Source of the DNA: Macrostomum lignano
Lineage: Eukaryota
NCBI GenBank assembly: GCA_002269645.1
Contig: NIVC01002194.1
Span: 23,349-87,348, forward strand
Length of the DNA stretch: 64,000 nt
Direction: 5' to 3'
The notes beneath the pieces were generated by a model. It was given only the letters and a program-made list of their open reading frames with translations, was not told where the DNA came from and made no database searches. Shown piece by piece: positions 2,451 through 54,100 of this stretch (its first letter is position 1; each line of letters starts with the position of its first letter). The position numbers and the translations under genes were made by a program.

Positions 2451-3131
2451 TCACACACTCTGCCTCCTTCTCTTTGCGCCTCTGGAGTTTGTTGCGATCC
2501 TGTCACAGCATCTCAATTTCTCGTTCTCGTTTCTCAGCTTTTTGAGCATCCAGCAGCAGCTGGTGGGCGACATCCTTCTCCTTAAGTTTAGTCTCAATTT
2601 CTTTGTCCTTCTCCTCCAACTTCTCGTGCAGATTGGAAATGGCCTTACTGGCCTGCTTCTTGGCTTGGACCGAGAAGCAGGCGACTCTGCGAGCTCCTTT
2701 GCACGGCGTGCCTCCTCAAAAGCTGCATCATCCTTCAGTCTTTGACGGTAGCTGGCGTAGGCACTGTTACACATATTGATCAGACTAGAAGTCACTGGCA
2801 GAGTAGCTGCAGTCCATTGTTGAGCTTGAAGGCAGGAACGAGCCACAACCAATGCCCTGACTGTTTCCGGTTTCAAAACTAAGCGTTTCTTTGTGACCGT
2901 GTCACTCAAAGTACTAAAGATGCGCTCAACTTCTGCACTTCCATTAGGAAGGATTAGAAGTGCGCAAACAAGTCGAATCAATAGAGGGCACTTGTCCCCC
3001 ACTTGCTCGGAAAGTCTTTGCCAGAATGTAACAATGTCCAAATCAGCATTGGCTGTGGAATAAATTTCGGTTTGATGCAGTCGAGCCTCTACTTCGAGAG
3101 AACCAATGTCAAAAGAACCACTCAGTTGCAA
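2451..3131 (-). pseudogene. hAT transposase C-terminal dimerisation-domain remnant
   Basis: DIVTFWQ...CPLLIRLVCALLILPNGSAEVERIFSTL...KRLVLKPETVRALV matches the hATC dimerisation motif. No catalytic core between the TIRs. Confidence 0.85.
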
Positions 3132-9810: not shown

Positions 9811-10590
9811 ATGGCTTCGAGAAGACCTCCACCAAGGCAGGCTTTACTGGCCGCAAAACGCAGACTCGGTCTCGATTCCGACACCGACGAGTCTGAAATC
9901 AACGACAGCGCTGACTCGGACTCCGAGGATGAGGCTGTTATACACGGCTACCCTCATTCTCTCGCGGGCTATTTTATTCCAAATGCACATTGAGCTGATG
10001 TACGTGCAATGTTGGTGTACGTGTAATTGGATGTAACTTTCTCTTGTATCGAACCCTTAGGTTGGCTCTTAAATATATATATATCGCAATCAATGCCCAA
10101 GTCGGGGCCGAAGTCTTACTCAGCAAATTATCTCGGTTTCGCGTCAGTCACTATAGAGGCCAATTTGGAGCAAGAAGAAGACGAAATTGTGGAACAACAG
10201 GAAGCCTGGAACATTGTGTCGGAGCACGACGACGAACGACCGGATCAATGTCTCGAATTTCTGAGAACAACTGGCTGCAATCCATCCTGGAATCTGCCGG
10301 ACCAAGCCGATGATAATGAATCTTTCTTCGTCGAGAAGTTCTTGACAGGTAACATGTTTCAGCGTCTTTCGGACTGGACAAATGCGAGAGCTTGGAAGGA
10401 GTACGTGAATGTGCAGGAAGAGCCGGATGTGCCGCACAGGGTATGTCAGTGGAAGGACTGTAGCCCAAATGAAATTCGGAAGTTTGTGGGCATTGTGCTC
10501 TACATGGGACTAAACAAGAAGCCTGAATTGAACAGTTACTGGTCGAAGGATTTGTTCTACCACATCCCATACCTTCTTCCGACTTTTTAA
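9811..10590 (+). mobile_element. piggyBac transposase 5' remnant
   Basis: Acidic N-terminus MASRR...DSDTDESEINDSADSDSEDE, then FFVEKFLTGNMFQRLSDWTNARA...WKDCSPNEIRKFVGIVLYMGLNKKPELNSYWSKD typical of PGBD N-terminal regions. Stop at ~9993, truncated at a TTAA at ~10590, no catalytic core. Confidence 0.8.
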
Positions 10591-22067: not shown

Positions 22068-22127
22068 GCTTCTCGGCTTCTGAAGGCAAAGCGAAAAACT
22101 GTTAATTAAATTAAGATTCTTAAGTCT

Positions 22128-29236: not shown

Positions 29237-29857
29237 NNNNNNNNNNNNNNNNNNNNNNNNNNNNNNNNNNNNNNNNNNNNNNNNNNNNNNNNNNNNNNNN
29301 NNNNNNNNNNNNNNNNNNNNNNNNNNNNNNNNNNNNNNNNNNNNNNNNNNNNNNNNNNNNNNNNNNNNNNNNNNNNNNNNNNNNNNNNNNNNNNNNNNNN
29401 NNNNNNNNNNNNNNNNNNNNNNNNNNNNNNNNNNNNNNNNNNNNNNNNNNNNNNNNNNNNNNNNNNNNNNNNNNNNNNNNNNNNNNNNNNNNNNNNNNNN
29501 NNNNNNNNNNNNNNNNNNNNNNNNNNNNNNNNNNNNNNNNNNNNNNNNNNNNNNNNNNNNNNNNNNNNNNNNNNNNNNNNNNNNNNNNNNNNNNNNNNNN
29601 NNNNNNNNNNNNNNNNNNNNNNNNNNNNNNNNNNNNNNNNNNNNNNNNNNNNNNNNNNNNNNNNNNNNNNNNNNNNNNNNNNNNNNNNNNNNNNNNNNNN
29701 NNNNNNNNNNNNNNNNNNNNNNNNNNNNNNNNNNNNNNNNNNNNNNNNNNNNNNNNNNNNNNNNNNNNNNNNNNNNNNNNNNNNNNNNNNNNNNNNNNNN
29801 NNNNNNNNNNNNNNNNNNNNNNNNNNNNNNNNNNNNNNNNNNNNNNNNNNNNNNNNN
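29237..29857. other. Assembly gap (621 N)
   Basis: Run of N. Confidence 1.
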
Positions 29858-30469
29858 AACTCGTCACCTGTCTCGCTGTCATAAAACTCACTGCATTCCA
29901 CCGATCTCAAAAACTCAACATCAACCCATCTGCTCCTCATCCCAGACACGGACCCCGAGCTGTCATCGTCAAACGGCACCACGCCAAGATCTTGCCGAGT
30001 CATCAGCCGCCCGATACGAGCTGCCGGCCAGAAGTCACCAGCGCTACACAGACTACACGCGACATCAACAATCATCATCAGCACGTTCAGATTCAGCATC
30101 AAGGACGGCAAGGCAGCACAAGTAGCAGCAATGAAATTTTGAAGCTCAGTGACAACAGCGAAGGAGGCAGCGGCGGTGAGCCGTTGCTTCTGCAGTCGGC
30201 CACTCAACAGACGACTCGAATTCCCACCGTTGTTGGCCTCGCAGCCACAGTTCGGCAGCAGCAGCTGCAGCAGAAACGCCAGGGCCGGCTGTCCGGCAAA
30301 TCTCGAGCCGGCAGCCAACAGCAGCGGGGCCAGCTGTCGCAGGCCAAGAGGCAGCAGCGACAGCGCAGAGGCTGCCACGGGTCAGGGGCGGCCGGCAGTT
30401 TATGCGGAGGGCGAGAAAGCACCCTACGGTGGATAGAATTGTCACTCTACTGCAGGTGAGGCTGGTTGA

Positions 30470-30484
30470 GACAGACAGGCAGGC

Positions 30485-30552
<68 letters not shown>

Positions 30553-30554
30553 GG

Positions 30555-30586
<32 letters not shown>

Positions 30587-30590
30587 GGCG

Positions 30591-32442: not shown

Positions 32443-32522
32443 TTGTTACAACGCGCAATATGATTAATGGCTTTTGTTTACCAAGGTATATATAAATTAT
32501 TTTAACTAATTTCAAAATCCAG

Positions 32523-35500
32523 GACAAACGAATCGATGACGACCAATTGGAGCAGATCCAGGACCTGCAGCTGCCTCTGCTCAGGAAAATTCTCAACGTG
32601 ATCTTCATCTCGTTAGGAGTAGTATTTCTGCTCGGGGTGATTGTCGTTATTGTTTACACTAATCTCGGTGAGCACTTTAGTTGAGTGTTTATAAGAGAGT
32701 AAGTAGAAGCTATAATGAGTGTTTATAAAGCACTGAAGAGTAAGTAGAAGCTAAAATGAGTGTTTATAAAGCACTAGAATGTAAGTAGAAGCTAAAATGA
32801 GTGTTTATAGAGCACTAGAGAGTAGAGCACTGAAGAGTAAGTAGAAGCTATAATGAGTGTTTAAAAAGCACTAGGGAGTAAGTAGAAGCTATAATGAGTG
32901 TTTATATAGCACTGAAGAGTAAGTAGAAGCTATAATGAGTGTTTATATAGCACTGAAGAGTAAGTAGAAGCTATAATGAGTGTTTATATAGCACTGAAGA
33001 GTAAGTAGAAGCTAAAATGAGTGTTTATATAGCACTGAAGAGTAAGTAGAAGCTATAGTGAGTGTTTATATAGCACTGAAGAGTAAGTAGAAGCTATAAT
33101 GAGTGTTTATATAGCACTGAAGAGTAAGTAGAAGCTAAAATGAGTGTTTACTGTTTATATAGCACTGAAGAGTAAGTAGAAGCTAAAATGAGTGTTTACT
33201 GTTTATATAGCACTGAAGAGTAAGTAGATGCTATAGTGAGTGTTTATATAGCACTGAAGAGTAAGTAGAAGCTATAATGAGTGTTTATATAGCACTGAAG
33301 AGTAAGTAGAAGATATAATGAGTGTTTACTGTTTATATAGCACTGAAGAGTAAGTAGAAGCTAAAATGAGTGTTTACTGTTTATATAGCACTGAAGAGTA
33401 AGTAGATGCTATAGTGAGTGTTTATATAGCACTGAAGAGTAAGTAGATGCTATAGTGAGTGTTTATATAGCACTGAAGAGTAAGTAGATGCTATAGTGAG
33501 TGTTTATATAGCACTGAAGAGTAAGTAGATGCTATAGTGAGTGTTTATATAGCACTGAAGAGTAAGTAGATGCTATAGTGAGTGTTTATATAGCACTGAA
33601 GAGTAAGTAGATGCTATAGTGAGTGTTTATATAGCACTGAAGAGTAAGTAGATGCTATAGTGAGTGTTTATATAGCACTGAAGAGTAAGTAGATGCTATA
33701 GTGAGTGTTTATATAGCACTGAAGAGTAAGTAGATGCTATAGTGAGTGTTTATATAGCACTGAAGAGTAAGTAGAAGCTATAGTGATTGTTTATATAGCA
33801 CTGAAGAGTAAGTAGATGCTATAGTGAGTGTTTATATAGCACTGAAGAGTAAGTAGAAGCTAAAATGAGTGTTTATACAGCACCAGAGAGTAAGTAGAAG
33901 CTATAATGAGTGTTTACTGTTTATATAGCACTGAAGAGTAAGTAGAAGTTAAAATGAGTGTTTATATAGCACTAGAGAGTAAGTAGAAGCTATAATGAGT
34001 GTTTACTGTTTATACAGCACTGAAGAGTAAGTAGAAGCTATAATGAGTGTTTATATAGCACTAGAGAGTAAGTAGAAGCTATAATGAGTGTTTATATAGC
34101 ACTGAAGAGTAAGTAGAAGCTATAATGAGTGTTTATATAGCACTGAAGAGTAGGTAGAAGCTATAATGAGTGTTTATATAGCACTGAAGAGTAAGTAGAA
34201 GCTAAAATGAGTGTTTACTGTTTATATAGCACTGAAGAGTAAGTAAAAGCTAAAATGAGTGTTTATATAGCACTGAAGAGTAGGTAGAAGCTAAAATGAG
34301 TGTTTGTATAGCACTGAAAAGTAAGTAGAAGCTATAATGAGTGTTTATATAGCACTGAATAGTAAGTAGAAGCTATAATGAGTGTTTATATAGCACTGAA
34401 GAGTAAGTAGAAGCTATAATGAGTGTTTATATAGCACTGAAGAGTAAGTAGAAGCTAAAATGAGTGTTTACTGTTTATATAGCACTGAAGAGTAAGTAAA
34501 AGCTAAAATGAGTGTTTATATAGCACTGAAGAGTAGGTAGAAGCTAAAATGAGTGTTTGTATAGCACTGAAAAGTAAGTAGAAGCTATAATGAGTGTTTA
34601 TATAGCACTGAATAGTAAGTAGAAGCTATAATGAGTGTTTATATAGCACTGAAGAGTAAGTAGAAGCTATAATGAGTGTTTATATAGCACTGAAGAGTAA
34701 GTAGAAGCTATAATGAGTGTTTATATAGCACTGAAGAGTAAGTAGAAGCTATAATGAGTGTTTATAAAGCACTAGAATGTAAGTAGAAGCTCAAATGGGT
34801 GTTTATAAAGCAGTAGAGAGTAAGTAGTAGCTAAAATGAGTGTTTATAAAGCACTAGAGTAAGTAGAAGCTAAAATGAGTGTTTATAAAGCACTAGAATG
34901 TAAGTAGAAGCTTAAATGGGAGTTTATAAAGCAGTAGAGAGTAAGTAGTAGCTAAAATGAGTGTTTATAAAGCACTAGAATGTAAGTAGAAGCTTAAATG
35001 GGAGTTTATAAAGCAGTAGAGAGTAAGTAGTAGCTAAAATGAGTGTTTATAAAGCACTAGAGTAAGTAGAAGCTATAATGAGTGTTTATAAAGCACTAGA
35101 ATGTAAGTAGAAGCTTAAATGGGTGTTTATAAAGCAGTAAAGAGTAAGTAGTAGCTAAAATGAGTGTTTATAAAGCACTAGAGTAAGTAGAAGCTAAAAT
35201 GAGTGTTTATATAGCACTAGAATATAAGTAAAAGCTTAAATGGGTGTTTATAAAGCAGTAGAGAGTAAGTAAAGACTAAAATGGGTGTTTACAAAGCACT
35301 AGAGAGTATATAGAAGCTATAATGAGTGTTTATATAGCACTAGAGAGTAAGTAGAAGCTATAATGAGTGTTTATATAGCACTAGAGAGTAAATAGAAGCT
35401 ATAATGAGTGTTTATATAGCACTAGAGAGTAAGTAGAAGCTATAATGAGTGTTTATAAAGCACTAGAGAGTAAGTAGAAGCTATAATGAGTGTTTATATA

Positions 35501-36459: not shown

Positions 36460-37265
36460 ATGGCAGCAAGGCGGTCAATAAGATTGGTTTGGCTGATACT
36501 GCTGATTGCTCTGTTGGCATGCGGGCTGACTGTCGGGTTGCCAACCAGCGATGATGAGTCAGTGCTGAGTCCTGAGATTAGTGAGTACCACAGTATTTCA
36601 TTTTTATGTTCATTTTATTCAACAGCACCGAAACAAAAAAGACTAAAAAAATTGTTATAGAAGAGATTCGTAAAGGAGAGATTCGTAGGGGTGAGATTCG
36701 TAGAGGATAGATTCGTAAAGGAGAGATTCGTAGGGGTGAGATTAGTAGAGGATAGATTCGTAAAGGAGAGATTCGTAGGGGTGAGATTCGTAGAGGAGAG
36801 ATTCGTAGGGGTGAGATTCGTAGAGGAGAGATTCGTAGGGGTGAGATTCGTACGGGCGAGATTCGTAGGGGTGAGATTCGTAGAGGAGAGATTCGTATGG
36901 GTGAGATTCGTAGAGGAGAGATTCGTACGGGTAAGATTCGTAGGAGTGAGATTCGAATAGGTGAGATTCGTAGGGGTGAGATTCGTAGGGGTGAGATTTG
37001 AAGAGGTGAGATTCGCGTATGATATGACTCGAAATAGTTTGAAAGCTGTGAAGCTATTACAACCATCGATGCACAAAAACTTTTTTATAATCTTTCACAG
37101 ATGTAAACAGGTTGACGGACTTCAACAGACTGGCATACAGCGATGACTCGTCAAGTAAAGCGGCCGATTCTAGCGAGCTCAACACTGTCTTCGAAGACGA
37201 AAGAGGAGAGGAAACGGCTGCGCAACGAAAGTGCCCGTATGGTTCGTCCAGTGAGTAACTAACTG

Positions 37266-37300
<35 letters not shown>

Positions 37301-37301
37301 G

Positions 37302-37344
<43 letters not shown>

Positions 37345-37417
37345 GACTAACTAACTGACTAACTGACTAACTAACTAACTAACTAACTGACTAGCTAACT
37401 AACTAACTAACTAACTG

Positions 37418-37452
<35 letters not shown>

Positions 37453-37493
37453 GACTAACTGACTAACTAACTAAATAACGAACTGACTAACTG

Positions 37494-37524
<31 letters not shown>

Positions 37525-37637
37525 GACTAACTAACTAACTGACTAACTGACTAACTGACTAACTGACTAACTAACTAACTGACTAACTGACTGACTAACT
37601 AACTAACTGACTAACTGACTAACTAACTGACTAACTG

Positions 37638-37680
<43 letters not shown>

Positions 37681-37929
37681 GACTAACTAACTAACGAACT
37701 AACTAACTAACTAACTGACTAACTGACTAACTGACTAACTAACTAACTAACTAACTGACTAACTGACTGACTAACTAACTGACTAACTAACTGACTAACT
37801 AACTAACTAACTAACTGACTAACTAACTAACTAACTAACTAACTGACTAACTAACTAACTAACTAACTGACTAACTAACTAACTAACTAACTGACTAACT
37901 AACTGACTAACTAACTAACTAACTAACTG

Positions 37930-37960
<31 letters not shown>

Positions 37961-37981
37961 GACTAACTAACTGACTAACTG

Positions 37982-38052
<71 letters not shown>

Positions 38053-40928
38053 GACTAACTAACTAACTGACTGAGTAACTCCGCTCTTTAAACTAATATC
38101 CCTACCCCCACAGGCATCAACTGCGCCCTGAGCAGCCAGGAAGCCACTGACGCAGAGGCTCCAGCCGAGGACCCAGTGGTAGAGCGGACCAAGTCCGCAT
38201 GGATCGAGGAGCTGCTCTCCAAGGCGGACAACGCGGACGCCGCGGCCGATTTGGTGCAGCAGATCAGGCGCAAGAAGTCCCGCAGCGGACTGCACAGCTT
38301 GCGCCGGGCCTGCCAGGCCATGTGCCCGAAATGCGTGTGCGGAGTCATACTGCTCACGCCCACCTACAGCTCCAAGACTGGCAAAGACAGAATGAAAGGC
38401 GTTGCCGCATCCATCGGCGCTAGCAGAGGCGCCAAGAAGATCAAGAAGGGCGCCAAAAAGAAGGCCGGAAAGAAGGTAAAGAAAGGTGCAAAGAAGGCCG
38501 GAAAGAAGGTAAAGAAAGGTGCAAAGAAGGTGAAGAAAGGTGCAAAGAAGGCCGGAAAGAAGGCGAAGAAAGGAGCAAAGAAGACCGGAAAGAAGGCGAA
38601 GAAAGGTGCAAAGAAGGTGAAGAAAAGCAAAAAGAAGGCCGGAAAGAAGGTGAAGAAAGGTGCAAAGAAGGCTGGAAAGAAGGTGAAGAAAGGTGCAAAG
38701 AAGGCCGGAAAGAAGGTGCAGAAAGGTGCAAAGAAGGCCGGAAAGAAGGTGAAGAAAGGTGCAAAGAAAGTCGGAAAGAAGGTGAAGAAAGGTGCAAAGA
38801 AGGCCGGAAAGAAGGTGAAGAAAGGTGCAAAGAAAGTCGGAAAGAAGGTGAAGAAAGGTGCAAAGAAGACCGGAAAGAAGGTGAAGAAAGGTGCAAAGAA
38901 GACCGGAAAGAAGGTGAAGAAAGGTGCAAAGAAGGTGAAGAAAAGCAAAAAGAAGGCCGGAAAGAAGGTGAAGAAAGGTGCAAAGAAGGTGAAGAAAAGC
39001 AAAAAGAAGGCCGGAAAGAAGGTGAAGAAAGGTGCAAAGAAGGCCGGAAAGAAGGTGAAGAAAGGTGCAAAGAAGGCCGGAAAGAAGGTGAAGAAAGGTG
39101 CAAAGAAAGTCGGAAAGAAGGTGAAGAAAGGTGCAAAGAAGACCGGAAAGAAGGTGAAGAAAGGTGCAAAGAAGGTGAAGAAAGGTGCAAAGAAGGCTGG
39201 AAAGAAGGTGAAGAAAGGTGCAAAGAAGACCGGAAAGAAGGTGAAGAAAGGTGCAAAGAAGGTGAAGAAAGGTGCAAAGAAGGCTGGAAAGAAGGTGAAG
39301 AAAGGTGCAAAGAAGGCTGGAAAGAAGGTGAAGAAAGGTGCAAAGAAGACCGGAAAGAAGGTGAAGAAAGGTGCAAAGAAGGTGAAGAAAGGTGCAAAGA
39401 AGGCTGGAAAGAAGGTGAAGAAAGGTGCAAAGAAGGCCGGAAAGAAGGTGAAGAAAGGTGCAAAGAAGACCGGAAAGAAGGTGAAGAAAGGTGCAAAGAA
39501 GGTGAAGAAAAGCAAAAAGAAGGCCGGAAGGAAGGTGAAGAAAGGTGCAAAGAAGGCTGGAAAGAAGGTGAAGAAAGGTGCAAAGAAGGCCGGAAAGAAG
39601 GTGAAGAAAGGTGCAAAGAAGGCCGGAAAGAAGGTGAAGAAAGGTGCAAAGAAGGCTGGAAAGAAGGTGAAGAAAGGTGCAAAGAAGACCGGAAAGAAGG
39701 TGAAGAAAGGTGCAAAGAAGGTGAAGAAAGGTGCAAAGAAGGCTGGAAAGAAGGTGAAGAAAGGTGCAAAGAAGACCGGAAAGAAGGTGAAGAAAGGTGC
39801 AAAGAAGGCCGGAAAGAAGGTGAAGAAAGGTGCAAAGAAGGCTGGAAAGAAGGTGAAGAAAGGTGCAAAGAAGGCTGGAAAGAAGGTGAAGAAAGGTGCA
39901 AAGAAGACCGGAAAGAAGGTGAAGAAAGGTACAAAGAAGGTGAAGAAAGGTGCAAAGAAGGCTGGAAAGAAGGTGAAGAAAGGTGCAAAGAAGGCCGGAA
40001 AGAAGGCGAAGAAAAGCAAAAAGAAGGCTGGAAAGAAGGTGAAGAAAGGCAAAAAGAAGGCCGGAAAGAAGGCGAAGAAAAGCAAAAAGAAGGCTGGAAA
40101 GAAGGTGAAGAAAGGCAAAAAGAAGGCCGGAAAGAAGGCGAAGAAAAGCAAAAAGAAGGCCGGAAAGAAGGCGAAGAAAGGAGCAAAGAAGACCGGAAAG
40201 AAGGTGAAGAAAGGTGCAGAGAAGGTGAAGAAAGGCAAAAAGAAAGTCGGAAAGAAGGTCAAGAAAGACACAAAGAAGGCCGAAAAGAAGTTTACGAAAG
40301 GCGCAAAGAGGGTCGAAGAAGGTGCAAAGAAAGCGGGTAAAGAGATTAGCAAAAACGTCAGAACGTCAAAATCTGGATATAAATCTGGACATAAATCTGG
40401 ATATAAATCTGGACATAAATCTGGACATAAATCTATATATAAATCTGGACATAAATCTGGACATAAATCTGGATATAAATCTGGACATAAATCTGGATAT
40501 AAATCTGGACATAAATCTGGATATAAATCTGGATATAAATCTGGACATAAATCTGGATATAAATCTGGACATAAATCTGGATATAAATCTGGATATAAAT
40601 CTGGACATAAATATGGATATGGAACTAAGAGGCATAAGCACGGATGGAAGACGCACAGCAAAGAACATTCTGATCATTTCGAAAGACATTCGGCAAAAAC
40701 TTCTGCAACTGGAGAAAGTTCAAAGTCGCTGAGAAAGGTACGAGTTTAATGTTGGCTGAAATATTCGCACGCATCAGGTTAATACAAGCTATGAAAACAC
40801 AAATTCATTTTCAGTTCGCAGGACGCGAATCTGCTGGATATCCGGTGGAGAAACAGGAGGACATCATTGAGGAAACTTCGCCGGACCTCGAAGGAAATCT
40901 GGCCATGAAGATTTTCTTCCGTTACTGA
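36460..40928 (+). CDS. Secreted, extremely Lys-rich repetitive protein, ~1002 aa; exons 36460-36580, 37101-37250, 38114-40737, 40815-40928
   Basis: All three introns are GT-AG with compatible phases (1, 1, 0); the total is 3009 nt. Signal peptide MAARRSIRLVWLILLIALLACGLTVG, acidic region, Cys cluster, (KKGAKKAGKKV)n, (KSG[H/Y])x~21, acidic C-terminal exon ending KIFFRY*. Confidence 0.85.
36660..37015. repeat. 15-bp minisatellite GAGATTCGTAGGGGT/GAGATTCGTAGAGGA in intron 1 of the Lys-rich gene
   Basis: Read directly. Confidence 0.95.
37256..38075. repeat. (TAAC/TGAC)n microsatellite forming almost all of intron 2 of the Lys-rich gene
   Basis: Starts immediately after the GTGAG donor and ends ~40 nt before the acceptor. 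Confidence 0.98.
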
Positions 40929-41024
40929 TGACCATTGTTGAATTTACTAAAATTCTGAACCGTTACATGCTAAATTTTGATTTTTTGCTAATTACAAATA
41001 TTTAATCTTGGTTGGTTCTAAATA

Positions 41025-41280
41025 TCCCCTACAGGTGTTCGGGATCTCAAAATCTCCCATAAAGGTGTTTGGGATTTCAGAATCTCCCATAGAGGTATTA
41101 GGGATCTCAAAATCTCCCATAAAGGTGTTCATGATCTCAAAATCTCCCATAAAGGTGTTCATGATCTCAAAATCTCCCATAAAGGTGTTCATGATCTCAA
41201 AATCTCCCATAAAGGTGTTCATGATCTCAAAATCTCCCATAAAGGTGTTCATGATCTCAAAATCTCCCATAAAGATGTCC
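41025..41280. repeat. 30-bp minisatellite ATCTCAAAATCTCCCATAAAGGTGTTCATG
   Basis: Read directly. Confidence 0.95.
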
Positions 41281-42141
41281 AGGACCTCAAAATTTCAGCT
41301 ACGTCTGCCAACGCGTATCAAAAAAACTCTAATTAAAACACACACTAATTGATATTTGACAATATTTTCTGTTTAAACTTTGCTCTAAATAAAATTTGGA
41401 AAAAAAGTTCATTAATAGATTTTTGCAGAAATAGTTTTCTCATCCAGTGTGCTACGAGTACTGCACCCAGTACCGATGTACTTTACTATTGTCTGAGGTT
41501 ACAAAAATGCACAAAAAGCATCGCAATATGATGATGTCTATACTACGAGTATATACTATTACAAGTGCTAGATAACAATTAAAGCATGTTCATTTAAAAA
41601 ATCAATCATTAAATTTAAATTATTGTTAATTATTGCGTAAAAAGTACATTGGGCGTTAATAACCCATATGAATTGTCATGAAATTCCCTATAAATAAATT
41701 AATAAACGAGAAAAGGTGTCACTAATACGTAATCGTGCTTTGATCGATCTAAAACAAAAAAAGAAAATTGGCAGCAATGCGCATACACGCTACTAGAATA
41801 CACAGTAAATCAGTAGTATAGATAGGAAAGTCAATAATGGTGAAAATGACGGTAAACGATCAGTTAATGCAGTTAATAAATTAACAAATATTAGTACAAG
41901 AGCAGGATTGCAGTAGAAAGAGACGATCTTGATCATGAATAGAATTTTGTTTGTTAAAAACAAAAAATATATTTATATTTTGATCCGTTCAGATTCCACT
42001 AAATTAATTGTTAATAACTCTGAGAATATGTTCAACTATTTTCTAAAAAGCACTCTTTATTACTTATTTCTAGTACTACTAATACTAATATACTAAAGAA
42101 CAAAATTGTGCATCAGATGAAAACATGTTTACTCAAGTTAG

Positions 42142-45100
42142 TCATGACCTAGTGCTTTCTCTGGCCAGATCTTCGTAAGCGGGCTCAGTTCTTTGATGTC
42201 GGCATTCGCTTATCTCGCTTAAGCCCATTCGACAGAGAAGCTGAAATAGGATTGAAGAGGGAGGAAAATGGGGTTAAAGTAGTAGAAGGGGTTGAGAAAG
42301 GCGTGAGGTGGATGTCTGCAGGGGCAGGAATGTACTGGGTGGGTTGGAGAAGGCGTGAGGTGGGTGTCTGCAGAGGCAGGAATGTACTGGGTGGGTTGGA
42401 GAAGGCGTGAGATGGGTGTCGGCTGATGACAGCAATTAAACCTATAAAATATACTACAATAAATTGGCTATAAAGGAACCACTTACAAGCAAAGCCAACA
42501 AATCGGCAGTCATAAGCATGTAGAAAACATTCTGCCAGCCTGTATTCACGATCAGACCCGTCAGCAGAGGACCGAGTGCAGCGCCTGAATTTTTCAATTT
42601 AGATAAGTTTGATGCTACAATTCATGCCTAGCCTACTATAAGTAGCTTAATTAGTAAGTAGTAAATATTACATACCCATGCTCCCTGTCCCATCGATAAT
42701 AGCAGTAACAGTGGCCAGAGCTTTTGAATCGCCTTTAACTGACGTGCCTAAATCGGCGCTTACCGCAGTAGTAATTAGCGCGTATGGACCATTAACTAAT
42801 CCTCCAGTGATTAGGAGCAGGACTAGAAGGACAATTATTTATTCAAGTGAAACTTTCATAAGTGAAATAAGAGAAATAATTGATCAAATATAATTATCCG
42901 TTAAACTGACCTATCGAGTTAAATAATGATGTGTCACCAAACTTCTCGTAGACAAACAGCTGAAAGTTGATATAAGAAGTTTGCTATAATTCAGTTATTC
43001 CTACAGAAATTGTAATTCTAATATGCGTATTTATGCACAATAGGGGTATGGTTAAAATTTACGAAGATTGGACACATGGAACTATAAAATGTACATGTAA
43101 TAGAAGAATTTACCACAAATTTAGTAGATAGATTAAGTACATACCATTGGTGCCGCAAGAAGCAGCATCATCATGCAGGTGAGAGCTCGCCGACCAGTCA
43201 CATCGCTAACAACCCCAGCTAATACACCTCCAACAATGCCGCCAACATCGAATAGAGTTGATAGAAATGCGCTCTCTTCTGGGTTGAGACCGCTGGAGTG
43301 CTTAATGTAATTTGGCAACCAATAGAGAAAGGTATAGCTGACCAGTTTGGCGAAAAACAGGCACAGGGAGTACTCGATAACGCCCTGAAATTTATTTTTT
43401 ATAAAATGAAGTTTCATCTTGACACCTCCTCACTCAACCTCAGACTACATGTACACCGGATAAAGATAACAGGCCGGCGGATAAATTGACACCAACCTCA
43501 CTCTGCCTAGACTGACTAGAAAAGATAACAGGCCGGCGAAGAAATCGACACCCACCTCACTCTGCCTAGACTGACTAGAAAAGATAACAGTCCGGCGGAG
43601 AAATTGACACCCACCTCACTAGGCCTAGTCTGACTAGAAAAGATAAAAGGCCGGCGGAGAAATTGACACCCACCTCACTAGGCCTAGTCTGACTAGAAAA
43701 GATAACAGTCCGGCGGAGAAATTGACACCCACCTCACTAGGCCTAGTCTGACTAGAAAAGATAACAGTCCGGCGGAGAAATTGGCACCCACCTCACTAGG
43801 CCTAGTCTGACTAGAAAAGATAACAGGCCGGCGGATAAATTGACACCCACCTCACTCTGCCTAGTCTGACTAGAAAAGATAAAAGGCCGGCGGAGAAATT
43901 GACACCCACCTCACTAGGCCTAGTCTGACTAGAAAAGATAACAGGCCGGCGAAGAAATCGACACCCACCTCACTCCGCCTGGACTGACTAAAAAAGATAA
44001 CAGGCCGGCGAAGAAATCGACACCCACCCCACTCCGCTTTGACTGGCTAGAAAAGATGACAGGCCGGCAGATAAATTGACACCAACCTCACTCCGCTTTG
44101 ACTGACTAGAAAAGATAACAGTCCGGCGGAGAAATTGACACCCACCTCACTAGGCCTAGTCTGACTAGAAAAGATAACAGGCCGGCGGATAAATTGACAC
44201 CCACCTCACTCTGCCTAGTCTGACTAGAAAAGATAAAAGGCCGGCGGAGAAATTGACACCCACCTCACTAGGCCTAGTCTGACTAGAAAAGATAACAGGC
44301 CGGCGAAGAAATCGACACCCACCTCACTCCGCCTGGACTGACTAAAAAAGATAACAGGCCGGCGAAGAAATCGACACCCACCCCACTCCGCTTTGACTGG
44401 CTAGAAAAGATGACAGGCCGGCAGATAAATTGACACCAACCTCACTCCGCTTTGACTGACTAGAAAAGATAACAGTCCGGCGGAGAAATTGACACCCACC
44501 TCACTAGGCCTAGTCTGACTAGAAAAGATAACAGTCCGGCGGAGAAATTGACACCCACCTCACTAGGCCTAGTCTGACTAGAAAAGATAACAGGCCGGCG
44601 AAGAAATCGACACCCACCTCACTCCGCTTTGACTGGCTAGAAAAGATGACAGGCCGGCAGATAAATTGACACCAACCTCACTCCGCTTTGACTGACTAAA
44701 AAAGATAACAGGCCGGTGGAGAAATCGACACCCACCTCACCACCTAAAGCATAGAAAATTAAAAAAAATACAGAACGTATGCTCGTCCACATACCGGAAT
44801 ACGAACAGCGCCTAGCAGGCTGATTGCCTTTCGACTGCCCATATCACTAGAAGCGGTCGACTCAGTCAGAGTAGAATGTCTTGGCAGCAGAGGGTCGGTG
44901 TCAGCGGCGGGCACCCGTTGATTAACTGACGAAGACGCCCTACTAGGAGGAGTCGCCCCGACAGGGGACGCAGACAGAGAAGAAGTCTGCTGTTGCTCAG
45001 AGTCGGGACTATCAAACCATTGTCGATCGTGGGTATTTGGTGCGTACTCAGTTATGTCCAATGTTGAAGGCGTTACCGACTGAACCATGATGTCCTAAAT

Positions 45101-48100: not shown

Positions 48101-51100
48101 GGAGAGGGAGAGGGGAGAGAGGGGGAAGAGAGAGAGGGAGAGGGAGAGGGGAGAGGGAGAAGGGAGAGAGGGGGAAAGGAGAGAGGGAGAGGGAGAGGGG
48201 AGAGAGGGGGAAGAGAGAGAGGGAGAGGGAGAGGGGAGAGAAGAGAGAGGGAGAACAGGAGAAGAGAGAGGAAATAACGAGAGAGGAGAGCAGAGGGGAG
48301 AGGAGAGAGAATGGGGAAGAGGGAGTTTGCAAGGGGGGAGGCGAGGAAAAGAGAAAGCAGGCGGGTGTGACAGCATAAGATGTGCATGATTACAGGGGTC
48401 TATGAAATTTGCTTGCGAGAAGTTTGCTTGCCGAAGTTTGCTTGCGGGACTTTTGCTTGCGGAAATTTGCTTGCCGAGCTTTGCTTGCCGAACTTTGCTT
48501 GCCGAGCTTTGCTTGCCGAATTTTGCTTGCAGGAAATTTGCTTGCTGCACATAAGCTTGCCGAAGTTTGCTTGCAGGAACTTTGCTTGCCGAGGTTTTCC
48601 AGCCACAGTTTTCTTGCGGAACCTTAAAGAACCTATTATTTTTATTGAGCTCTTGTATTTCTATTTTTATTTACTAAGATTCGTGGAAGTCGCCTCTAGT
48701 GTTTATGATTTTGAATGAGGATATGTCGGATTTGAAAAGCCCTAATGCAGAAATGTAATAATTTAGTTTTTTACTGGGAATACATTTTCAACAAAAATTG
48801 GACACAATTTCGAACAATGACATATCGGATGATTTAGGCACCGAAATGTACAGAATATATTTTTTGGAAATGAACGTACATTGTACATGTACATCAATGT
48901 AAATCATTCCTAAATATATTAAATCTCTAAGTCTATATACTAAATTCTTAGAATGAAACTCTATAAGCCTAGTTTGAAAGCTTAGTGTGAAGTCAGTTTA
49001 TGTCGGCGCCGATAAGAATCCACTTGCAAAGCATCTGTAGTAAGTAATAATTGACTGACCAACTTTACAAGCAATCAAAACAAGCAAGCAGACAAGAAAA
49101 TAATTCGGCAAGTTAAAACCTTGCAATTGTGATTGCGAATTTCTAGGAAGCAGACATCAAAATTCGGCAAGCAAAGTTCGGCAAGCAAAGTTCGGCAAGC
49201 AAAGTTCGGCAAGCAAAATTCCTGCAAGCAAAGTTCGGCAAGCAAACTTCCCACAAGCAAACGTCGTACTCCCGATTACAGATTGCAAAGTTAGGCTCTG
49301 CTTAATGTGTGACAAATAAGAACAAAGACTGCACGAACCTGGACAAAGATGTAATATTCAATCCGATGGATTTGCAGATAATATCCAAAGCCAAACATGG
49401 CAGTCGTAAGTCCACTTAAAAGCATGCCAATACCTAAGTAATGCCGCAGATTAACTCTTTCTGCAATATGACCACTGAAAACAGTTTAAGGGAATGGCCT
49501 GTTTATATACAGTACTTTTTATATGAAATCAAAATCAAAATATTTTTATTTAACTAATAACAACAAATTCTTTACCTGACAAGCATACCAATTGCATAGG
49601 CAAATAAGTAAGCATATTCCAGTGAACCCAGCAGTTCTGTGTAGTCACCCTTATCTAAGATGTTAAAAATAAAAATAAATTGATGACAATTAATAATAGC
49701 AAGTTAATATGTTCAACTAATGTACGAAAAACAAATGACATACCAAATGGAGCCCAGCTACAGAATGCATTATTTTTGTCTGTTATAACAAAATGCTTTT
49801 TAGCAGCAACTTCTGTGCAGTTCTGATGCAAAACACTCTAAAAATGGAATATTAAAATTTAGGTTTCATTATTAAAGAAGTTGTATTAATAATAATATAT
49901 TATATCAGATATCTAAACTTACCTTAACAACAGAAATAGGCTTCCTTGATAGATGATAGGTTGTATAGCAAACAAATGTGAAAAATAAAATAAAGTATTG
50001 ATACCTAAAATGAGTTTTAACACACAAAAGTTAATCTTTAAAAAGTTTAGCAAAATAACATTTTGACTACAGCTAAGTCCATAGAATAAATTGAATTATT
50101 TGAATATTAATAATGAATAGAACCATTTATTTTTTTCAATGGTCAAAGGATGCTATCTTATCAATGTTAACATTTATTTTTTTCTGCTGTGGTGGTAGGG
50201 GCTGACTTCTAATATACTAAAAATGAAATGCTTGGTTGCTTGCTTGTAATTGATTTTCTCCCGAACGGCTCAACCGATTTTCTTCAAACTTGCACCATTC
50301 GATCAGAAATTTTCCCGGGACGGTACATGCATATTGGCTAAGAAATTGCTCAATGTTAAAGGGATTAAATATTCGAAAAACATGATTTTTTGCAAAGGTC
50401 AAGCAGCTCTTTCGACCTGAAATGCATTGTAAGAATGCTAGAGAAAAATCTGACTGGTTGAATTCTGATTCTGAAATAGATTGCATCACAATACACTTTA
50501 TTTATCGTCTGTGTACTGGCTGAATTTGACACTCAATTGAATTGCGTCACAGCTTTGAGTGTGAAAGCATAGCGCAGTACCCAATTTATATTACGTAACC
50601 ATATTGTTAACTTTCATAGACACTGGTACTGACTTGCCTAAGAAATTGATTATGTCATAACTGCTTCGCGTGACTTTTTACTCTACCTGACTTGGTGTGA
50701 GTGTTGAATTATATAAGTGGTACAAATTCACTGATAACTTCGATGAGAGCTAGCCTAGAGCTGAGCAGACCAGACTGCTAATGCAGCGACCTGGGTTCGA
50801 ATCTAAGTAGTTTAAAAGTAGTAGTGTAAAATTTTTTATTAAAAGCTTTTATTAAAGGACTAAATAAAAACACTTAGATTACTGCACTCGATAAGCTAAG
50901 GATTATTGCTCTTGGCAAACCAAGGAATACTGCACTCGATAAGCCAAGGATTATTGCTCTTGGCAAACCAAGGATTACTGCACTCGATAAGCCATGGATT
51001 ATTGCTATTAATAAACCAAGGATTACTGCACTCGATAAGCCAAGGATTATTGCTATTAATAAACCATGAATTACTGCACTCGATAAGCCAAGGATTATTG

Positions 51101-54100
51101 CTATTAATAAACCAAGGATTACTGCACTCATAAGCCATGGATTATTGCTATTAATAAACCAAGGATTACTGCACTCGATAAGCCAAGGATTATTGCTATT
51201 AATAAACCAAGGATTACTGCACTCGATAAGCCAAGGATTATTGCTATTAATAAACCAAGGATTACTGCACTCGATAAGCCAAGGACTATTGCTATTAATA
51301 AACCAAGGATTACTGCACTCAATAAACCAAGGACTATTGCTCTTGGCAAACCAAGGATTACTGCACTCGATAAGCCAAGGACTATTGCTCTTGGCAAACC
51401 AAGGATTACTGCACTCGATAAGCCAAGGACTATTGCTCTTGGCAAACCAAGGATTACTGCACTCGATAAGCCATGGATTATTGCTATTAATAAACCAAGG
51501 ATTACTGCACTCGATAAGCCAAGGATTATTGCTATTAATAAACTAAGGATTACTGCACTCGATAAACCAAGGATTATTGCTATTAATAAACCAAGGATTA
51601 TGCACTTGGCAAACCAAGGATTACTGCAATCGATAAGCCAAGGATTATTGCTATTAATAAACCAAGCATTACTGCACTCAATAAACCAAGGACTATTGCT
51701 ATTAATAAACCAAGGATTACTGCACTCAAAAAACCAAGGACTATTGCTCTTGGCAAACCAAGGATTACTGCACTCGATAAGCCAAGGATTATTGCTATTA
51801 ATAAACCAAGGATTACTGCACTCGATAAGCCAAGGATTATTGCTATTAATAAACCAAGGATTAATGCACTCGATAAACCAAGGATTATTGCTATTAATAA
51901 ACCAAGGATTACTGCACTCGATAAGCCAAGGATTATTGCTATTAATAAACCAAGGATTATGCACTTGGCAAACCAAGGATTACTGCACTCGATAAGCCAA
52001 GGATTATTGCTATTAATAAACCAAGCATTACTGCACTCAATAAACCAAGGACTATTGCTATTAATAAACCAAGGATTACTGCACTCAAAAAACCAAGGAC
52101 TATTGCTCTTGGCAAACCAAGGATTACTGCACTCGATAAGCCAAGGATTATTGCTATTAATAAACCAAGGATTATGCACTTGGCAAACCAAGGATTACTG
52201 CAATCGATAAGCCAAGGATTATTGCTATTAATAAACCAAGCATTACTGCACTCAATAAACCAAGGACTATTGCTATTAATAAACCAAGGATTACTGCACT
52301 CAAAAAACCAAGGACTATTGCTCTTGGCAAACCAAGGATTACTGCACTCGATAAGCCAAGGATTATTGCTATTAATAAACCAAGGATTACTGCACTCGAT
52401 AAGCCAAGGATTATTGCTATTAATAAACCAAGGATTACTGCACTCGATAAGCCAAGGATTATTGCTATTAATAAACTAAGGATTACTGCACTCGATAAAC
52501 CAAGGATTATTGCTATTAATAAACCAAGGATTATGCACTTGGCAAACCAAGGATTACTGCAATCGATAAGCCAAGGATTATTGCTATTAATAAACCAAGC
52601 ATTACTGCACTCAATAAACCAAGGACTATTGCTATTAATAAACCAAGGATTACTGCACTCAAAAAACCAAGGACTATTGCTCTTGGCAAACCAAGGATTA
52701 CTGCACTCGATAAGCCAAGGATTATTGCTATTAATAAACCAAGGATTACTGCACTCGATAAGCCAAGGATTATTGCTATTAATAAACCAAGGATTAATGC
52801 ACTCGATAAACCAAGGATTATTGCTATTAATAAACCAAGGATTACTGCACTCGATAAGCCAAGGATTATTGCTATTAATAAACCAAGGATTATGCACTTG
52901 GCAAACCAAGGATTACTGCACTCGATAAGCCAAGGATTATTGCTATTAATAAACCAAGGATTACTGCACTCAATAAACCAAGGACTATTGCTATTAATAA
53001 ACCAAGGATTACTGCACTCAATAAACCAAGGACTATTGCTCTTGGCAAACCAAGGATTACTGCACTCGATAAGCCAAGGACTATTGCTCTTGGCAAACCA
53101 AGGATTACTGCACTCGATAAGCCATGGATTATTGCTATTAATAAACCAAGGATTACTGCACTCGATAAGCCAAGGATTATTGCTATTAATAAACCAAGGA
53201 TTACTGCACTCGATAAACCAAGGATTATGCACTTGGCAAACCAAGGATTACTGCACTCGATAAGCCAAGGATTATTGCTATTAATAAACCAAGGATTACT
53301 GCACTCAATAAACCAAGGACTATTGCTATTAATAAACCAAGGATTACTGCACTCAATAAACCAAGGACTATTGCTCTTGGCAAACCAAGGATTACTGCAC
53401 TCGATAAGCCAAGGACTATTGCTCTTGGCAAACCAAGGATTACTGCACTCGATAAGCCATGGATTATTGCTATTAATAAACCAAGGATTACTGCACTCGA
53501 TAAGCCAAGGATTATTGCTATTAATAAACCAAGGATTACTGCACTCGATAAACCAAGGATTATTGCTATTAATAAACCAAGGATTATGCACTTGGCAAAC
53601 CAAGGATTACTGCACTCGATAAGCCAAGGATTATTGCTATTAATAAACCAAGGATTACTGCACTCGATAAGGCATGGATTATTGCTATTAATAAACCAAG
53701 GATTACTGCACTCGATAAGCCAAGGATTATTGCTATTAATAAACCATGAATTACTGCACTCGATAAGCCAAGGATTATTGCTATTAATAAACCAAGGATT
53801 ACTGCACTCATAAGCCATGGATTATTGCTATTAATAAACCAAGGATTACTGCACTCGATAAGCCAAGGATTATTGCTATTAATAAACCAAGGATTACTGC
53901 ACTCGATAAGCCAAGGATTATTGCTATTAATAAACCAAGGATTACTGCACTCGATAAGCCAAGGACTATTGCTATTAATAAACCAAGGATTACTGCACTC
54001 AATAAACCAAGGACTATTGCTCTTGGCAAACCAAGGATTACTGCACTCGATAAGCCAAGGACTATTGCTCTTGGCAAACCAAGGATTACTGCACTCGATA

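What the first reader, a model, noticed from the sequence alone, without database searches (positions are those of the whole stretch)
36460..40928. Orphan ~1000-aa secreted polycation: signal peptide, acidic pro-region, Cys cluster, ~630 aa of (KKGAKKAGKKV)n
Seen: four exons splice in frame to 3009 nt. A hydrophobic leader is followed by an acidic segment (DDESVLSPE...EDERGEE...EATDAEAPAED), a basic RRKK site, a C-x3-C-x2-C-x-C cluster, a repeat region in which about half the residues are Lys, and an acidic last exon. Unlike the other arrays in this window, this one keeps frame for 2.6 kb despite many A-runs, varies in whole codons (11-aa and 7-aa units, GCC/GCT swaps, A/T/V exchanges), and sits between non-repetitive coding sequence. 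Known: Lys/Arg-rich repeat proteins act as bioadhesives (flatworm Mlig-ap1, mussel foot proteins), and cationic antimicrobial precursors often carry acidic pro-pieces. Inference: a gland product (adhesive, egg cement, rhabdite/mucus or antimicrobial) whose charge is masked by acidic ends until processing. I do not recognise it as a described protein.
Basis: partly seen in the sequence, partly recalled or inferred. Interest (0 to 1): 0.8.

Follow-up and report, generated by a model that had tools for sequence, protein, structure and literature searches.

The report
Secreted lysine-repeat protein gene, flatworm
This looks like a real, unannotated four-exon gene of the flatworm Macrostomum lignano for a roughly 100 kDa secreted protein that is mostly lysine repeats, of the same general kind as the positively charged "cohesive" glue proteins known from flatworms, but its expression and function are untested.

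Summary
Exons 36460-36580, 37101-37250, 38114-40737 and 40815-40928 (+) all have GT..AG borders and join in frame to 3009 nt (1002 aa). The protein has a signal-peptide-like leader, an acidic stretch, RRKK, a C-x3-C-x2-C-x-C cluster, 639 aa of 55% Lys repeats and a mildly acidic tail.

"Keeps frame" is weak evidence: four of six frames are open across the array, and non-coding arrays in this window also lack indels. The stronger evidence is external. One homologue (P0002, 277 aa, an intronless, transcript-like Logan contig) has the same architecture: leader, acidic region, conserved helical module with an identical AMCPKCVCGVIL cluster, Lys-rich basic region, acidic tail. Module dN/dS is about 0.27.

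So it is a near-orphan family, not a strict orphan. No Pfam, PDB or fold match was found. The organism is M. lignano, identified by one UniProt hit.

Charge masking by the acidic ends fails: about -20 against +372, and RRKK is not conserved.

Best reading: a secreted polycation that cross-links or condenses polyanionic secretions, like flatworm ap3 and the Mlig-ap1 KR regions. No transcript of this locus was seen, so tissue and function are inferred.

The parts
36460..36580 (+). Exon 1. Start codon in the context gaacATGg. Signal-peptide-like leader at aa 1-26/27 (basic n-region, 12-residue Leu/Ile core, small residues at ACG / TVG). Start of the acidic region.
   Evidence: in-frame stop 11 codons upstream
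36581..37100 (+). Intron 1 (GTGAGT..CAG, phase 1), holding a 15-nt satellite at 36663-37015
37101..37250 (+). Exon 2, 150 nt, phase 1-1, an acidic Ser/Asp/Glu-rich segment. The same exon borders are used in the M. lignano UniProt prediction P0001, taken from another copy or assembly.
37251..38113 (+). Intron 2 (GTGAGT..CAG, phase 1), almost entirely the (TAACTAAC)n satellite at 37256-38080
38114..40737 (+). Exon 3, 2624 nt: the unique GC-rich 5' part, the Lys array, the KSGY/H array and a unique tail
38179..38355 (+). Conserved module VERTKSAWIEELL...ACQAMCPKCVCGVILL. It is 61% identical to P0002, is predicted to be a small helical bundle, and contains the non-conserved RRKK at 38266-38277.
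38311..38340 (+). Four-cysteine cluster C-x3-C-x2-C-x-C (CQAMCPKCVC). The AMCPKCVCGVIL stretch is identical in the homologue.
38428..40344 (+). Coding minisatellite of 47 x 33-nt (GAKKAGKKVKK) and 12 x 21-nt (GAKKVKK) units arranged in higher-order blocks. 639 aa, 55% Lys, net +349. Ala/Val recur every 3.64 residues. It contains 51 phase-0 donor-like AAG|GTRAAG sites.
40369..40620 (+). Second coding array, 21 x 12 nt (KSGY/KSGH): 13% Tyr, 11% His, 24% Lys
40621..40737 (+). Unique His/Lys/Ser-rich end of exon 3 (GTKRHKHGWKTHSKEHSDHFERH...SLRK)
40738..40814 (+). Intron 3 (GTACGA..CAG, phase 0)
40815..40928 (+). Exon 4: mildly acidic C-terminal tail (net -4) and the TGA stop. ATTAAA/AATAAA signals lie at 41332/41388, beyond a 30-nt satellite.

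Best explanation
This is a genuine four-exon Macrostomum lignano gene for a secretory-pathway polycation of about 104 kDa and pI about 10.9.

Shown:
- a leader with signal-peptide anatomy
- an acidic linker
- a roughly 60-aa helical module ending in a four-Cys cluster, under purifying selection and shared with one 277-aa homologue of identical architecture encoded by an intronless, transcript-like contig
- two in-frame coding minisatellites: 639 aa of GAKKAGKKVKK/GAKKVKK, then 21 x KSGY/KSGH
- a weakly acidic tail

Inferred origin. The ancestral protein had a short Lys-rich linker, about 85 aa in the homologue. In this satellite-prone genome it was blown up by unequal crossing-over of 33/21-nt units.

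Inferred mechanism:
1. After signal-peptide cleavage the Cys cluster disulfide-links or oligomerises the folded head.
2. The Lys array cannot be neutralised by the protein's own acidic parts, so it is packaged with polyanionic cargo (sulfated or glycosylated secretory material) in gland granules.
3. After release it acts as a multivalent electrostatic cross-linker or condenser of anionic glycans and surfaces. This is a cohesive or cement component like flatworm ap3 and the KR regions of Mlig-ap1.
4. The 3.64-residue Ala/Val periodicity would allow amphipathic helices once the charge is neutralised.
5. The Tyr/His/Lys block offers cation-pi, metal or oxidative cross-linking.

Confidence split: real gene for a secreted polycation about 0.8; cohesive, cement or glue-type role about 0.4.
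For: Gene model:
- In-frame, with canonical splice sites.
- The signal-peptide-like start is one of only 2 among 1764 ATGs in the window; hydropathy.
- Exon versus intron GC differs as expected.

Homologue P0002:
- E 1e-15 among 1.84 billion representative proteins; BLASTP E 6e-23.
- It sits on 923-nt and 908-nt intronless Logan contigs from two sequencing runs.
- Same architecture: signal peptide, acidic region, module, basic low-complexity region, acidic tail.
- In the module dN is 0.37 against dS 1.38, and half of the identical residues use different codons.

Module structure: the AF2 model has helices with pLDDT about 85.

Array:
- Lys codons are almost invariant, and variation is confined to the A/T/V/G/S positions.
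- Apolar residues recur every 3.64 residues, and the units form higher-order blocks.

Known analogues in flatworm glue: Mlig-ap1 KR regions (over 3600 aa, pI above 14); Mile-ap3, whose RNAi removes the dense core of adhesive vesicles; Tmed-ap3, a signal peptide followed by 3700 aa of GRKHS low complexity (PMC6410801, PMC6745481, PMC9229212).
Against: - No transcript or protein of this locus was found in any searched collection. The only public protein touching it is P0001, a frame-hopping chimera that uses exon 2.
- That other copy appears frameshifted within exon 2. This may be a real lesion or an assembly error.
- The array units are 90-100% alike, so the open frame says little about selection.
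- Composition differs from ap3 and Mlig-ap1: Arg is almost absent, Ala/Val are present, and there are no lectin, vWD or EGF domains.
- Six predicted tryptic peptides are absent from the published footprint MS tables. This is weak evidence, because the files are truncated and the identifications depend on the search database.
- The neighbouring genes (GPCR, MFS transporter, ceramidase) give no functional hint.
Confidence: 0.45

Rival explanations
1. It is an eggshell or egg-cement precursor. A Lys/His/Tyr-rich secreted protein is cured permanently by tyrosinase-type quinone tanning, with Tyr in the KSGY/H block as the oxidisable group and the many Lys and His residues as nucleophiles. On this view it is not part of the reversible duo-gland glue.
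For: - The 92-aa block has 13% Tyr, 11% His, 24% Lys and 22% Gly.
- DOPA and tyrosinase chemistry is tied to permanent adhesion and has not been found in flatworm temporary footprints (PMC9229212).
- From general knowledge: flatworm eggshell precursors such as the Fasciola vitelline proteins and schistosome p14/p48 are Gly/Tyr/His/Lys-rich.
Against: - Tyr is confined to about 9% of the protein, and the bulk is Tyr-free.
- No homology to any eggshell protein was found.
- There are no expression data.
Confidence: 0.15
2. The locus is not functional as drawn. It would be a redundant or decaying paralogue in a duplicated genome whose Lys-coding stretch underwent a recent neutral minisatellite expansion. 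The long open frame then reflects the youth of the array, not selection.
For: - About 38% of the window is tandem arrays, and non-coding arrays here also lack indels.
- Four of six frames are open across the array.
- Units are 90-100% identical.
- No transcript-derived protein of this locus appears among 15 billion proteins, although the homologue's does.
- The other copy behind P0001 shifts frame within exon 2.
Against: - All unique parts (leader, exon 2, module, tail, exon 4) are intact and in phase with good splice sites.
- The module is under purifying selection relative to the homologue.
- Lys codons are spared by the variation that does exist.
- Short-read assemblies are known to drop such low-complexity genes (PMC8621496).
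Confidence: 0.15
3. The main product is a short isoform of about 250 aa, like the homologue. One of the many AAG|GTRAAG donor-like sites inside the array would splice to the exon-4 acceptor, so most of the array would be intronic.
For: - There are 51 donor-like sites, all in phase 0, and the exon-4 acceptor is also phase 0.
- There is no acceptor-like site inside exon 3.
- The homologue is only 277 aa, with an 85-aa basic region.
Against: - Purine-rich GAR repeats are classical exonic splicing enhancers (general knowledge).
- The KSGY/H block and the unique tail of exon 3 stay in frame with no stop, which would be unnecessary if they were intronic.
- There are no RNA data either way.
Confidence: 0.1
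4. It is an antimicrobial or mucus-defence polycation made as a precursor whose acidic pro-piece keeps it harmless until cleavage at RRKK.
For: - Cationic amphipathic periodicity of 3.64 residues.
- An acidic region sits upstream of a basic region, with RRKK between them.
Against: - The charges do not balance: -16/-4 against +372.
- RRKK is not conserved and lies inside the conserved folded module.
- Hydrophobicity is very low: Ala/Val only, with Gly every 4-7 residues.
- A size of 100 kDa is unlike known antimicrobial peptides.
Confidence: 0.07
5. It is an intracellular histone-H1-tail-like or protamine-like nucleic-acid condenser, for example in sperm chromatin.
For: The Lys/Ala/Gly composition resembles H1 C-terminal tails, and the Lys/Pro/Ala region of the homologue resembles them even more.
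Against: - Both proteins carry a signal-peptide-like leader.
- No H15/linker-histone domain or any other Pfam domain was found.
Confidence: 0.03

Closest known systems
Flatworm adhesion protein 3 (Mile-ap3a/b of Minona ileanae; Tmed-ap3 of Theama mediterranea)
   Same: A stand-alone secreted protein made of a signal peptide followed by a very long, extremely basic low-complexity repeat rich in Lys and Gly (plus His and Ser in Tmed-ap3). It is hard to assemble from short reads. Its proposed role is electrostatic cohesion, and it forms the dense core of secretory vesicles (PMC6745481, PMC9229212).
   Different: - ap3 is rich in Arg (GRK/GRKHS); here Arg is 0.3% of the array and Ala/Val take its place.
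- ap3 is about 3700 aa; this protein is 1002 aa.
- This protein has a conserved N-terminal helical/4-Cys module and a Tyr/His block that are not described for ap3.
- Sequence homology was not tested, and expression is unknown.
KR-rich regions A-C of Mlig-ap1 (Macrostomum lignano adhesion protein 1)
   Same: Same species. Secreted, Lys/Arg-rich repeats of over 3600 aa with pI above 14, thought to bind polyanions (heparin blocks attachment) (PMC6410801).
   Different: Mlig-ap1 carries C-type lectin, vWD/C8/TIL and 17 EGF domains between its KR regions, and its repeats are K/R/P/S/N-type (for example SRKPRRKNRKSRKP). This protein has none of those domains and a different repeat.
P0002 (unnamed 277-aa protein from Logan contigs of runs SRR28338163/4)
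   Same: The only detectable homologue. It has a signal peptide, an acidic region, the same helical module with an identical AMCPKCVCGVIL stretch, a Lys-rich basic low-complexity region and an acidic C-terminus.
   Different: Its basic region is 85 aa, Lys/Pro-rich and not a perfect tandem array. It has no KSGY/H block and no RRKK. Its source organism is unknown.
Tyr/Lys/Gly/His-rich marine cement proteins (mussel mfp-5, sandcastle-worm Pc polycations) and flatworm eggshell precursors
   Same: The composition of the 92-aa KSGY/KSGH block. The idea that polycations are stored and delivered as complexes with polyanions (general knowledge).
   Different: No sequence homology. Tyr is absent from 90% of this protein. 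DOPA has not been found in flatworm temporary adhesive footprints (PMC9229212).
Histone H1 C-terminal domain / 11-residue amphipathic repeat proteins (apolipoproteins, alpha-synuclein, LEA3)
   Same: A Lys/Ala-rich, intrinsically disordered polycation. The hendecad/heptad spacing of small apolar residues (3.64-residue period) is compatible with helix formation on charge neutralisation.
   Different: It is in the secretory pathway, not the nucleus or cytosol. It has no H15 domain and far more Lys. The similarity is in composition and periodicity only.

Membership tests
Flatworm ap3 / KR-rich cohesive adhesive proteins | N-terminal signal peptide | tested here: met
   Basic n-region, 12-residue hydrophobic core and small residues at -3/-1. 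It is one of 2 of 1764 ATGs that pass a signal-peptide-like filter. SignalP itself was not available.
Flatworm ap3 / KR-rich cohesive adhesive proteins | [quoted passage not shown] | tested here: inconclusive
   The array is 64% of the protein, with K 55% and G 16%, but only 2 Arg in 639 aa, and A 14% and V 9% instead. His and Ser occur only in the 92-aa KSGY/H block.
Flatworm ap3 / KR-rich cohesive adhesive proteins | Sequence similarity to Mile-ap3, Tmed-ap3 or the Mlig-ap1 KR regions | not tested
The searches with the N- and C-terminal parts returned no such protein, but these searches included little of the array.
Flatworm ap3 / KR-rich cohesive adhesive proteins | Expression in adhesive gland cells, presence in footprints, RNAi adhesion or vesicle phenotype | not testable with these tools
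   Six predicted tryptic peptides are absent from the truncated footprint MS tables of PMC6410801. This is uninformative.
New family defined here (this gene + P0002) | Conserved helical module ending in A-C-x-A-M-C-P-K-C-V-C-G-V-I-L | tested here: met
   36 of 59 residues are identical (61%), E 1e-15 / 6e-23, dN/dS about 0.27. AF2 predicts helices with pLDDT about 85.
New family defined here (this gene + P0002) | Architecture: signal peptide, acidic region, module, Lys-rich basic low complexity, acidic C-terminus | tested here: met
   Both proteins have it. The family so far has only two members.
Cationic defence peptide precursors with an anionic pro-piece (defensin / proMBP type) | The anionic pro-region roughly balances the cationic mature part | tested here: not met
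   Net -16 (aa 28-140) and -4 (last exon), against +349 and +23.
Cationic defence peptide precursors with an anionic pro-piece (defensin / proMBP type) | A conserved processing site between the pro-piece and the mature part | tested here: not met
   RRKK aligns with QSRT in P0002 and lies inside the conserved, predicted-folded module.
Linker histone H1 / protamine-like sperm nuclear basic proteins | H15 winged-helix globular domain; no secretory leader | tested here: not met
   No Pfam domain at E<=1 apart from two sub-threshold chance hits. A hydrophobic leader is present in both family members.
DOPA-type cement / quinone-tanned eggshell precursors | Tyr-rich repeats flanked by Lys/Gly/His | tested here: met
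   KSGY/KSGH x21: Y 13%, H 11%, K 24%, G 22% over 92 aa. This covers only 9% of the protein.
DOPA-type cement / quinone-tanned eggshell precursors | Tyr hydroxylated to DOPA, co-expression with tyrosinase, homology to known precursors | not testable with these tools
   No homologue of that kind was found. The modification and the expression need experiments.

The most novel reading that the evidence does not exclude
The most novel reading not excluded: this is the founding member of an undescribed, taxonomically restricted family of secreted "head-plus-polycation" proteins. In this family a small disulfide-capable helical module anchors a Lys-rich tail, and the tail's length is set by an in-frame coding minisatellite. 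The array would then be length-hypervariable between individuals, and could be trimmed by its 51 phase-0 cryptic donors. That would give the animal a tunable polylysine-like cross-linker for gland secretions. Such a stand-alone polycation could also be the kind of "independent KR-rich protein" that Pjeta et al. (PMC6745481) proposed fused to a mucin-like core to create Mlig-ap1.
Probability: 0.15. Interest if true: 0.7.

Novelty: new variant of a known kind. Interest (0 to 1): 0.45.

Why it matters
If it is expressed, this would be a compact (1000 aa) stand-alone secreted polycation in the best-studied flatworm adhesion model. There, the positive charge of the glue has so far been attributed only to the giant Mlig-ap1. 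That would make it a tractable object for testing electrostatic cohesion and release (recombinant fragments, RNAi) and a simple template for biomimetic coacervate glues.

It also shows a protein-coding exon being inflated by the same minisatellite dynamics that fill about 38% of this window. It defines a small new module (helices plus an AMCPKCVC cluster) with no Pfam, PDB or fold relative.

Without expression data it remains a well-supported gene prediction with an inferred function.

Tried and rejected
- Word-indexed protein search with the N-terminal 203 aa. It returned only P0001, a frame-hopping ab initio M. lignano prediction that borrows exon 2. This identified the species but is not evidence of transcription.
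P0001 is not on record in the contig collection.
- Search with the two-sequence module alignment found nothing, not even P0002, so that index is incomplete.
- Search with the C-terminal 225 aa returned only chance SGHKSGH low-complexity hits.
- Two further hits of the exhaustive search, P0003 and P0004, are bacterial repeat proteins matching "WAQEAYLKASNA". They were rejected as spurious.
- A metagenome scan for the module gave 600 pattern matches, none confirmed.
- Pfam, PDB sequence search and Foldseek against PDB gave nothing significant; the best Foldseek E-value was 0.38, to generic helical bundles.
- Rfam and tRNA scans of the window found nothing.
- Literature searches for the repeat peptides and for the SRR run numbers gave no hits.
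- Six predicted tryptic peptides were searched in the footprint MS supplements of PMC6410801, with no hits. The tables are truncated and the identifications depend on the search database.
- I considered using the intact frame of the array as evidence of selection and rejected it.
- The 765-aa and 581-aa minus-strand ORFs across the array are by-products of the repeat: they start at TTG and have no coding flanks.

Full report
**What is there**

The window is eukaryotic and extremely rich in minisatellites. Tandem Repeats Finder arrays with score at least 100 cover about 24 of 64 kb, and there is one assembly gap at 29237-29857.

On the + strand, four segments with canonical borders join in frame: 36460-36580, 37101-37250, 38114-40737 and 40815-40928. 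The donors are A|GTGAGT, A|GTGAGT and AAG|GTACGA. The acceptors are tttcacAG, ccccacAG and ttttcAG. Together they make 3009 nt, or 1002 codons plus TGA. My first attempt started one base late, at 36461, and failed.

The ATG sits in a good context (gaacATGg), and an in-frame stop lies 11 codons upstream. GC is 0.50-0.63 in exons 1, 2, 4 and the unique 5' part of exon 3, against 0.31-0.42 in the three introns. Two of those introns are almost entirely satellites. The repeat blocks inside exon 3 have lower GC (0.46 for the K array, 0.28 for the KSGY/H block).

**Anatomy of the product**

| Residues | Feature |
|---|---|
| 1-26/27 | Leader MAARRSIRLVWLILLIALLACGLTVG: basic n-region, 12-residue Leu/Ile core, small residues at -3/-1 |
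| 28-140 | Acidic region, net -16 |
| 142-145 | RRKK |
| 157-166 | CQAMCPKCVC |
| 196-834 | Lys array: 47 GAKKAGKKVKK-type and 12 GAKKVKK-type units; K 55%, G 16%, A 14%, V 9%; net +349 |
| 927-965 | His/Lys/Ser-rich unique stretch |
| 966-1002 | Mildly acidic last exon, net -4 |

The mature protein would be about 104 kDa with pI about 10.9.

**Is it more than chance?**

This is weak.
- Two of the three + frames and two - frames are open across the array.
- Every other array in the window also yields long ORFs.
- Several clearly non-coding arrays show 0% indels.
- The 33-nt versus 21-nt unit difference is essentially one 12-nt event, copied by higher-order blocks such as "b t 7".

Better internal evidence is the following.
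- Only one frame is open through all four parts of exon 3: the unique 5' part, the K array, the KSGY/H array and the unique tail.
- A crude signal-peptide filter passes just 2 of the 1764 ATGs in the window, and one of them is 36460.
- Within the array, the 18 nt of Lys codons per unit carry 3 of the 14 distinct variants. The 15 nt of non-Lys codons carry 11.

**External evidence**

The N-terminal 203 aa hit only one public protein, P0001 (UniProt A0A1I8JRP0, Macrostomum lignano). This identifies the species. P0001 is a frame-hopping ab initio chimera. It strings pieces from 29.9-30.6 kb and 32.5 kb onto exon 2, and it leaves the model's frame within exon 2. It shows that a second copy or assembly of exon 2 exists, possibly with an indel. 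It says nothing about transcription.

An exhaustive HMMER scan of 1.84 billion representative proteins with the unique part of exon 3 found one true relative, P0002, at E 1e-15. Two bacterial repeat proteins from that scan were rejected as spurious.

P0002 is 277 aa. It is encoded without introns on 923-nt and 908-nt Logan contigs from two sequencing runs, SRR28338164 and SRR28338163. It therefore most likely represents a transcript. Its organism could not be determined.

P0002 has the same architecture as the window protein: a signal-peptide-like leader, an acidic region, the module VEATKRSWIAEL...AAADL...SGLRSLKAACKAMCPKCVCGVILM, an 85-aa Lys/Pro-rich basic region and an acidic C-terminus. 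Over the 59-residue module:
- 36 residues are identical, and 18 of those use different codons;
- dN is 0.37 against a saturating dS of 1.38.

This is protein-level purifying selection. It validates exon 3's reading frame, and it also shows that an upstream leader exon is required.

AlphaFold2 on the two-sequence alignment predicts four short helices with pLDDT about 85 in the core. Pfam, PDB sequence search and Foldseek against PDB give nothing significant. The module is therefore undescribed, and the protein is a near-orphan rather than an orphan.

**What I could not get**

No transcript or peptide of this locus itself turned up. The remaining protein searches returned nothing useful. The spliced model cannot be looked up in the contig collection. 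The repeat peptides occur in no paper. Six predicted tryptic peptides are absent from the published M. lignano footprint MS tables, but those tables are truncated and depend on the transcriptome database that was used. The published work itself notes that Lys/Arg low-complexity genes assemble poorly from short reads (PMC8621496; PMC6745481).

**Mechanism**

Shown: a secretory leader, a conserved folded head with four clustered cysteines, an enormous polycationic tail, and a Tyr/His/Lys block.

The charges are about -20 against +372. RRKK is QSRT in the homologue and lies inside the conserved helical module.

The counter-ions must therefore come from elsewhere. From this I infer packaging with polyanionic secretory cargo, followed after release by multivalent electrostatic cross-linking of anionic glycans and surfaces.

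Flatworm glue gives a direct precedent.
- The KR regions of Mlig-ap1 (over 3600 aa, pI above 14) are thought to bind polyanions; heparin blocks attachment, and Lys/Arg block release (PMC6410801).
- In Minona and Theama the polycation is a separate secreted protein, ap3. It is needed for the dense core of adhesive vesicles (PMC6745481; PMC9229212).

The Ala/Val residues of the array recur every 3.64 residues, at hendecad a/d/h and heptad a/d positions. The tail could therefore become an amphipathic helix once neutralised.

The KSGY/KSGH block resembles permanent-cement and eggshell chemistry more than temporary glue. DOPA has not been detected in flatworm temporary footprints. This keeps an egg-cement or eggshell role alive as a rival.

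The homologue's basic region is short and non-tandem. The 1.9-kb array here is therefore best explained as an in-frame minisatellite expansion of an ancestral Lys-rich linker.

**Rivals**

- A recently expanded, unexpressed or decaying paralogue.
- A short isoform. The array has 51 phase-0 AAG|GTRAAG donor-like sites and no internal acceptor, and the exon-4 acceptor is phase 0.
- An antimicrobial precursor.
- An H1-like nuclear protein, which the leader in both proteins and the lack of an H15 domain contradict.

**Verdict**

This is very probably a real, unannotated M. lignano gene for a secreted polycation belonging to a two-member, previously undescribed family. Functionally it is closest to the flatworm ap3/KR-region cohesive proteins, but membership of that family is not established: Arg is almost absent, homology was not tested, and expression is unknown.

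Novelty: a new variant of a known kind. Interest is moderate. It would rise if long-read cDNA, in situ hybridisation and RNAi place it in a gland secretion.

Noticed in passing
window 38428-40344: The Lys array contains 51 donor-like AAG|GTRAAG sites, all in phase 0, and exon 3 has no acceptor-like site. The exon-4 acceptor at 40815 is also phase 0, so any of these donors would give an in-frame shorter protein resembling the 277-aa homologue.
   Followed up: partly
window 29936-30590, 32517-32596, 37103-37251: The UniProt M. lignano entry A0A1I8JRP0 ("CG11148", P0001) is a chimera. It hops between reading frames across several satellite-separated pieces and ends in exon 2 of this gene, where it leaves the model's frame. 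This suggests either mis-annotation or an indel in another copy or assembly.
   Followed up: partly
window 20178-20924 (-) and about 21504-22100 (-): Rhodopsin-family GPCR exons (7tm_1, E 4.6e-10). A 21-nt array (20934-21212) and a 2.1-kb 13-nt array (22124-24224) lie next to or between them.
   Followed up: partly
window 2451-3131 (-), 8549-9472 (+), 10027-10590 (+): Transposon remnants: a hAT C-terminal dimerisation domain, Mos1/mariner-type HTH domains, and a piggyBac-type DDE_Tnp_1_7 fragment.
   Followed up: partly
window 42454-43417 (-): Exons of a major-facilitator-superfamily transporter on the minus strand, just downstream of the gene (MFS_1, E 3.7e-8).
   Followed up: partly
window 62012-62371 (-): An exon of a neutral/alkaline ceramidase (Ceramidse_alk_C, E 8e-8).
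   Followed up: no
window 29237-29857: A run of 621 N (scaffold gap) directly after a 34-nt array, so array lengths in this assembly may not be exact.
   Followed up: no
whole window: About 25 distinct tandem arrays with periods of 4-59 nt, plus a 48/359-nt higher-order array at 50877-55584, cover roughly 38% of the 64 kb. Most give long spurious ORFs in several frames.
   Followed up: partly
window 41020-41293: A 30-nt satellite lies between the stop codon (40928) and the first poly(A)-signal-like hexamers (ATTAAA at 41332, AATAAA at 41388), so the 3' UTR may itself contain a minisatellite.
   Followed up: no
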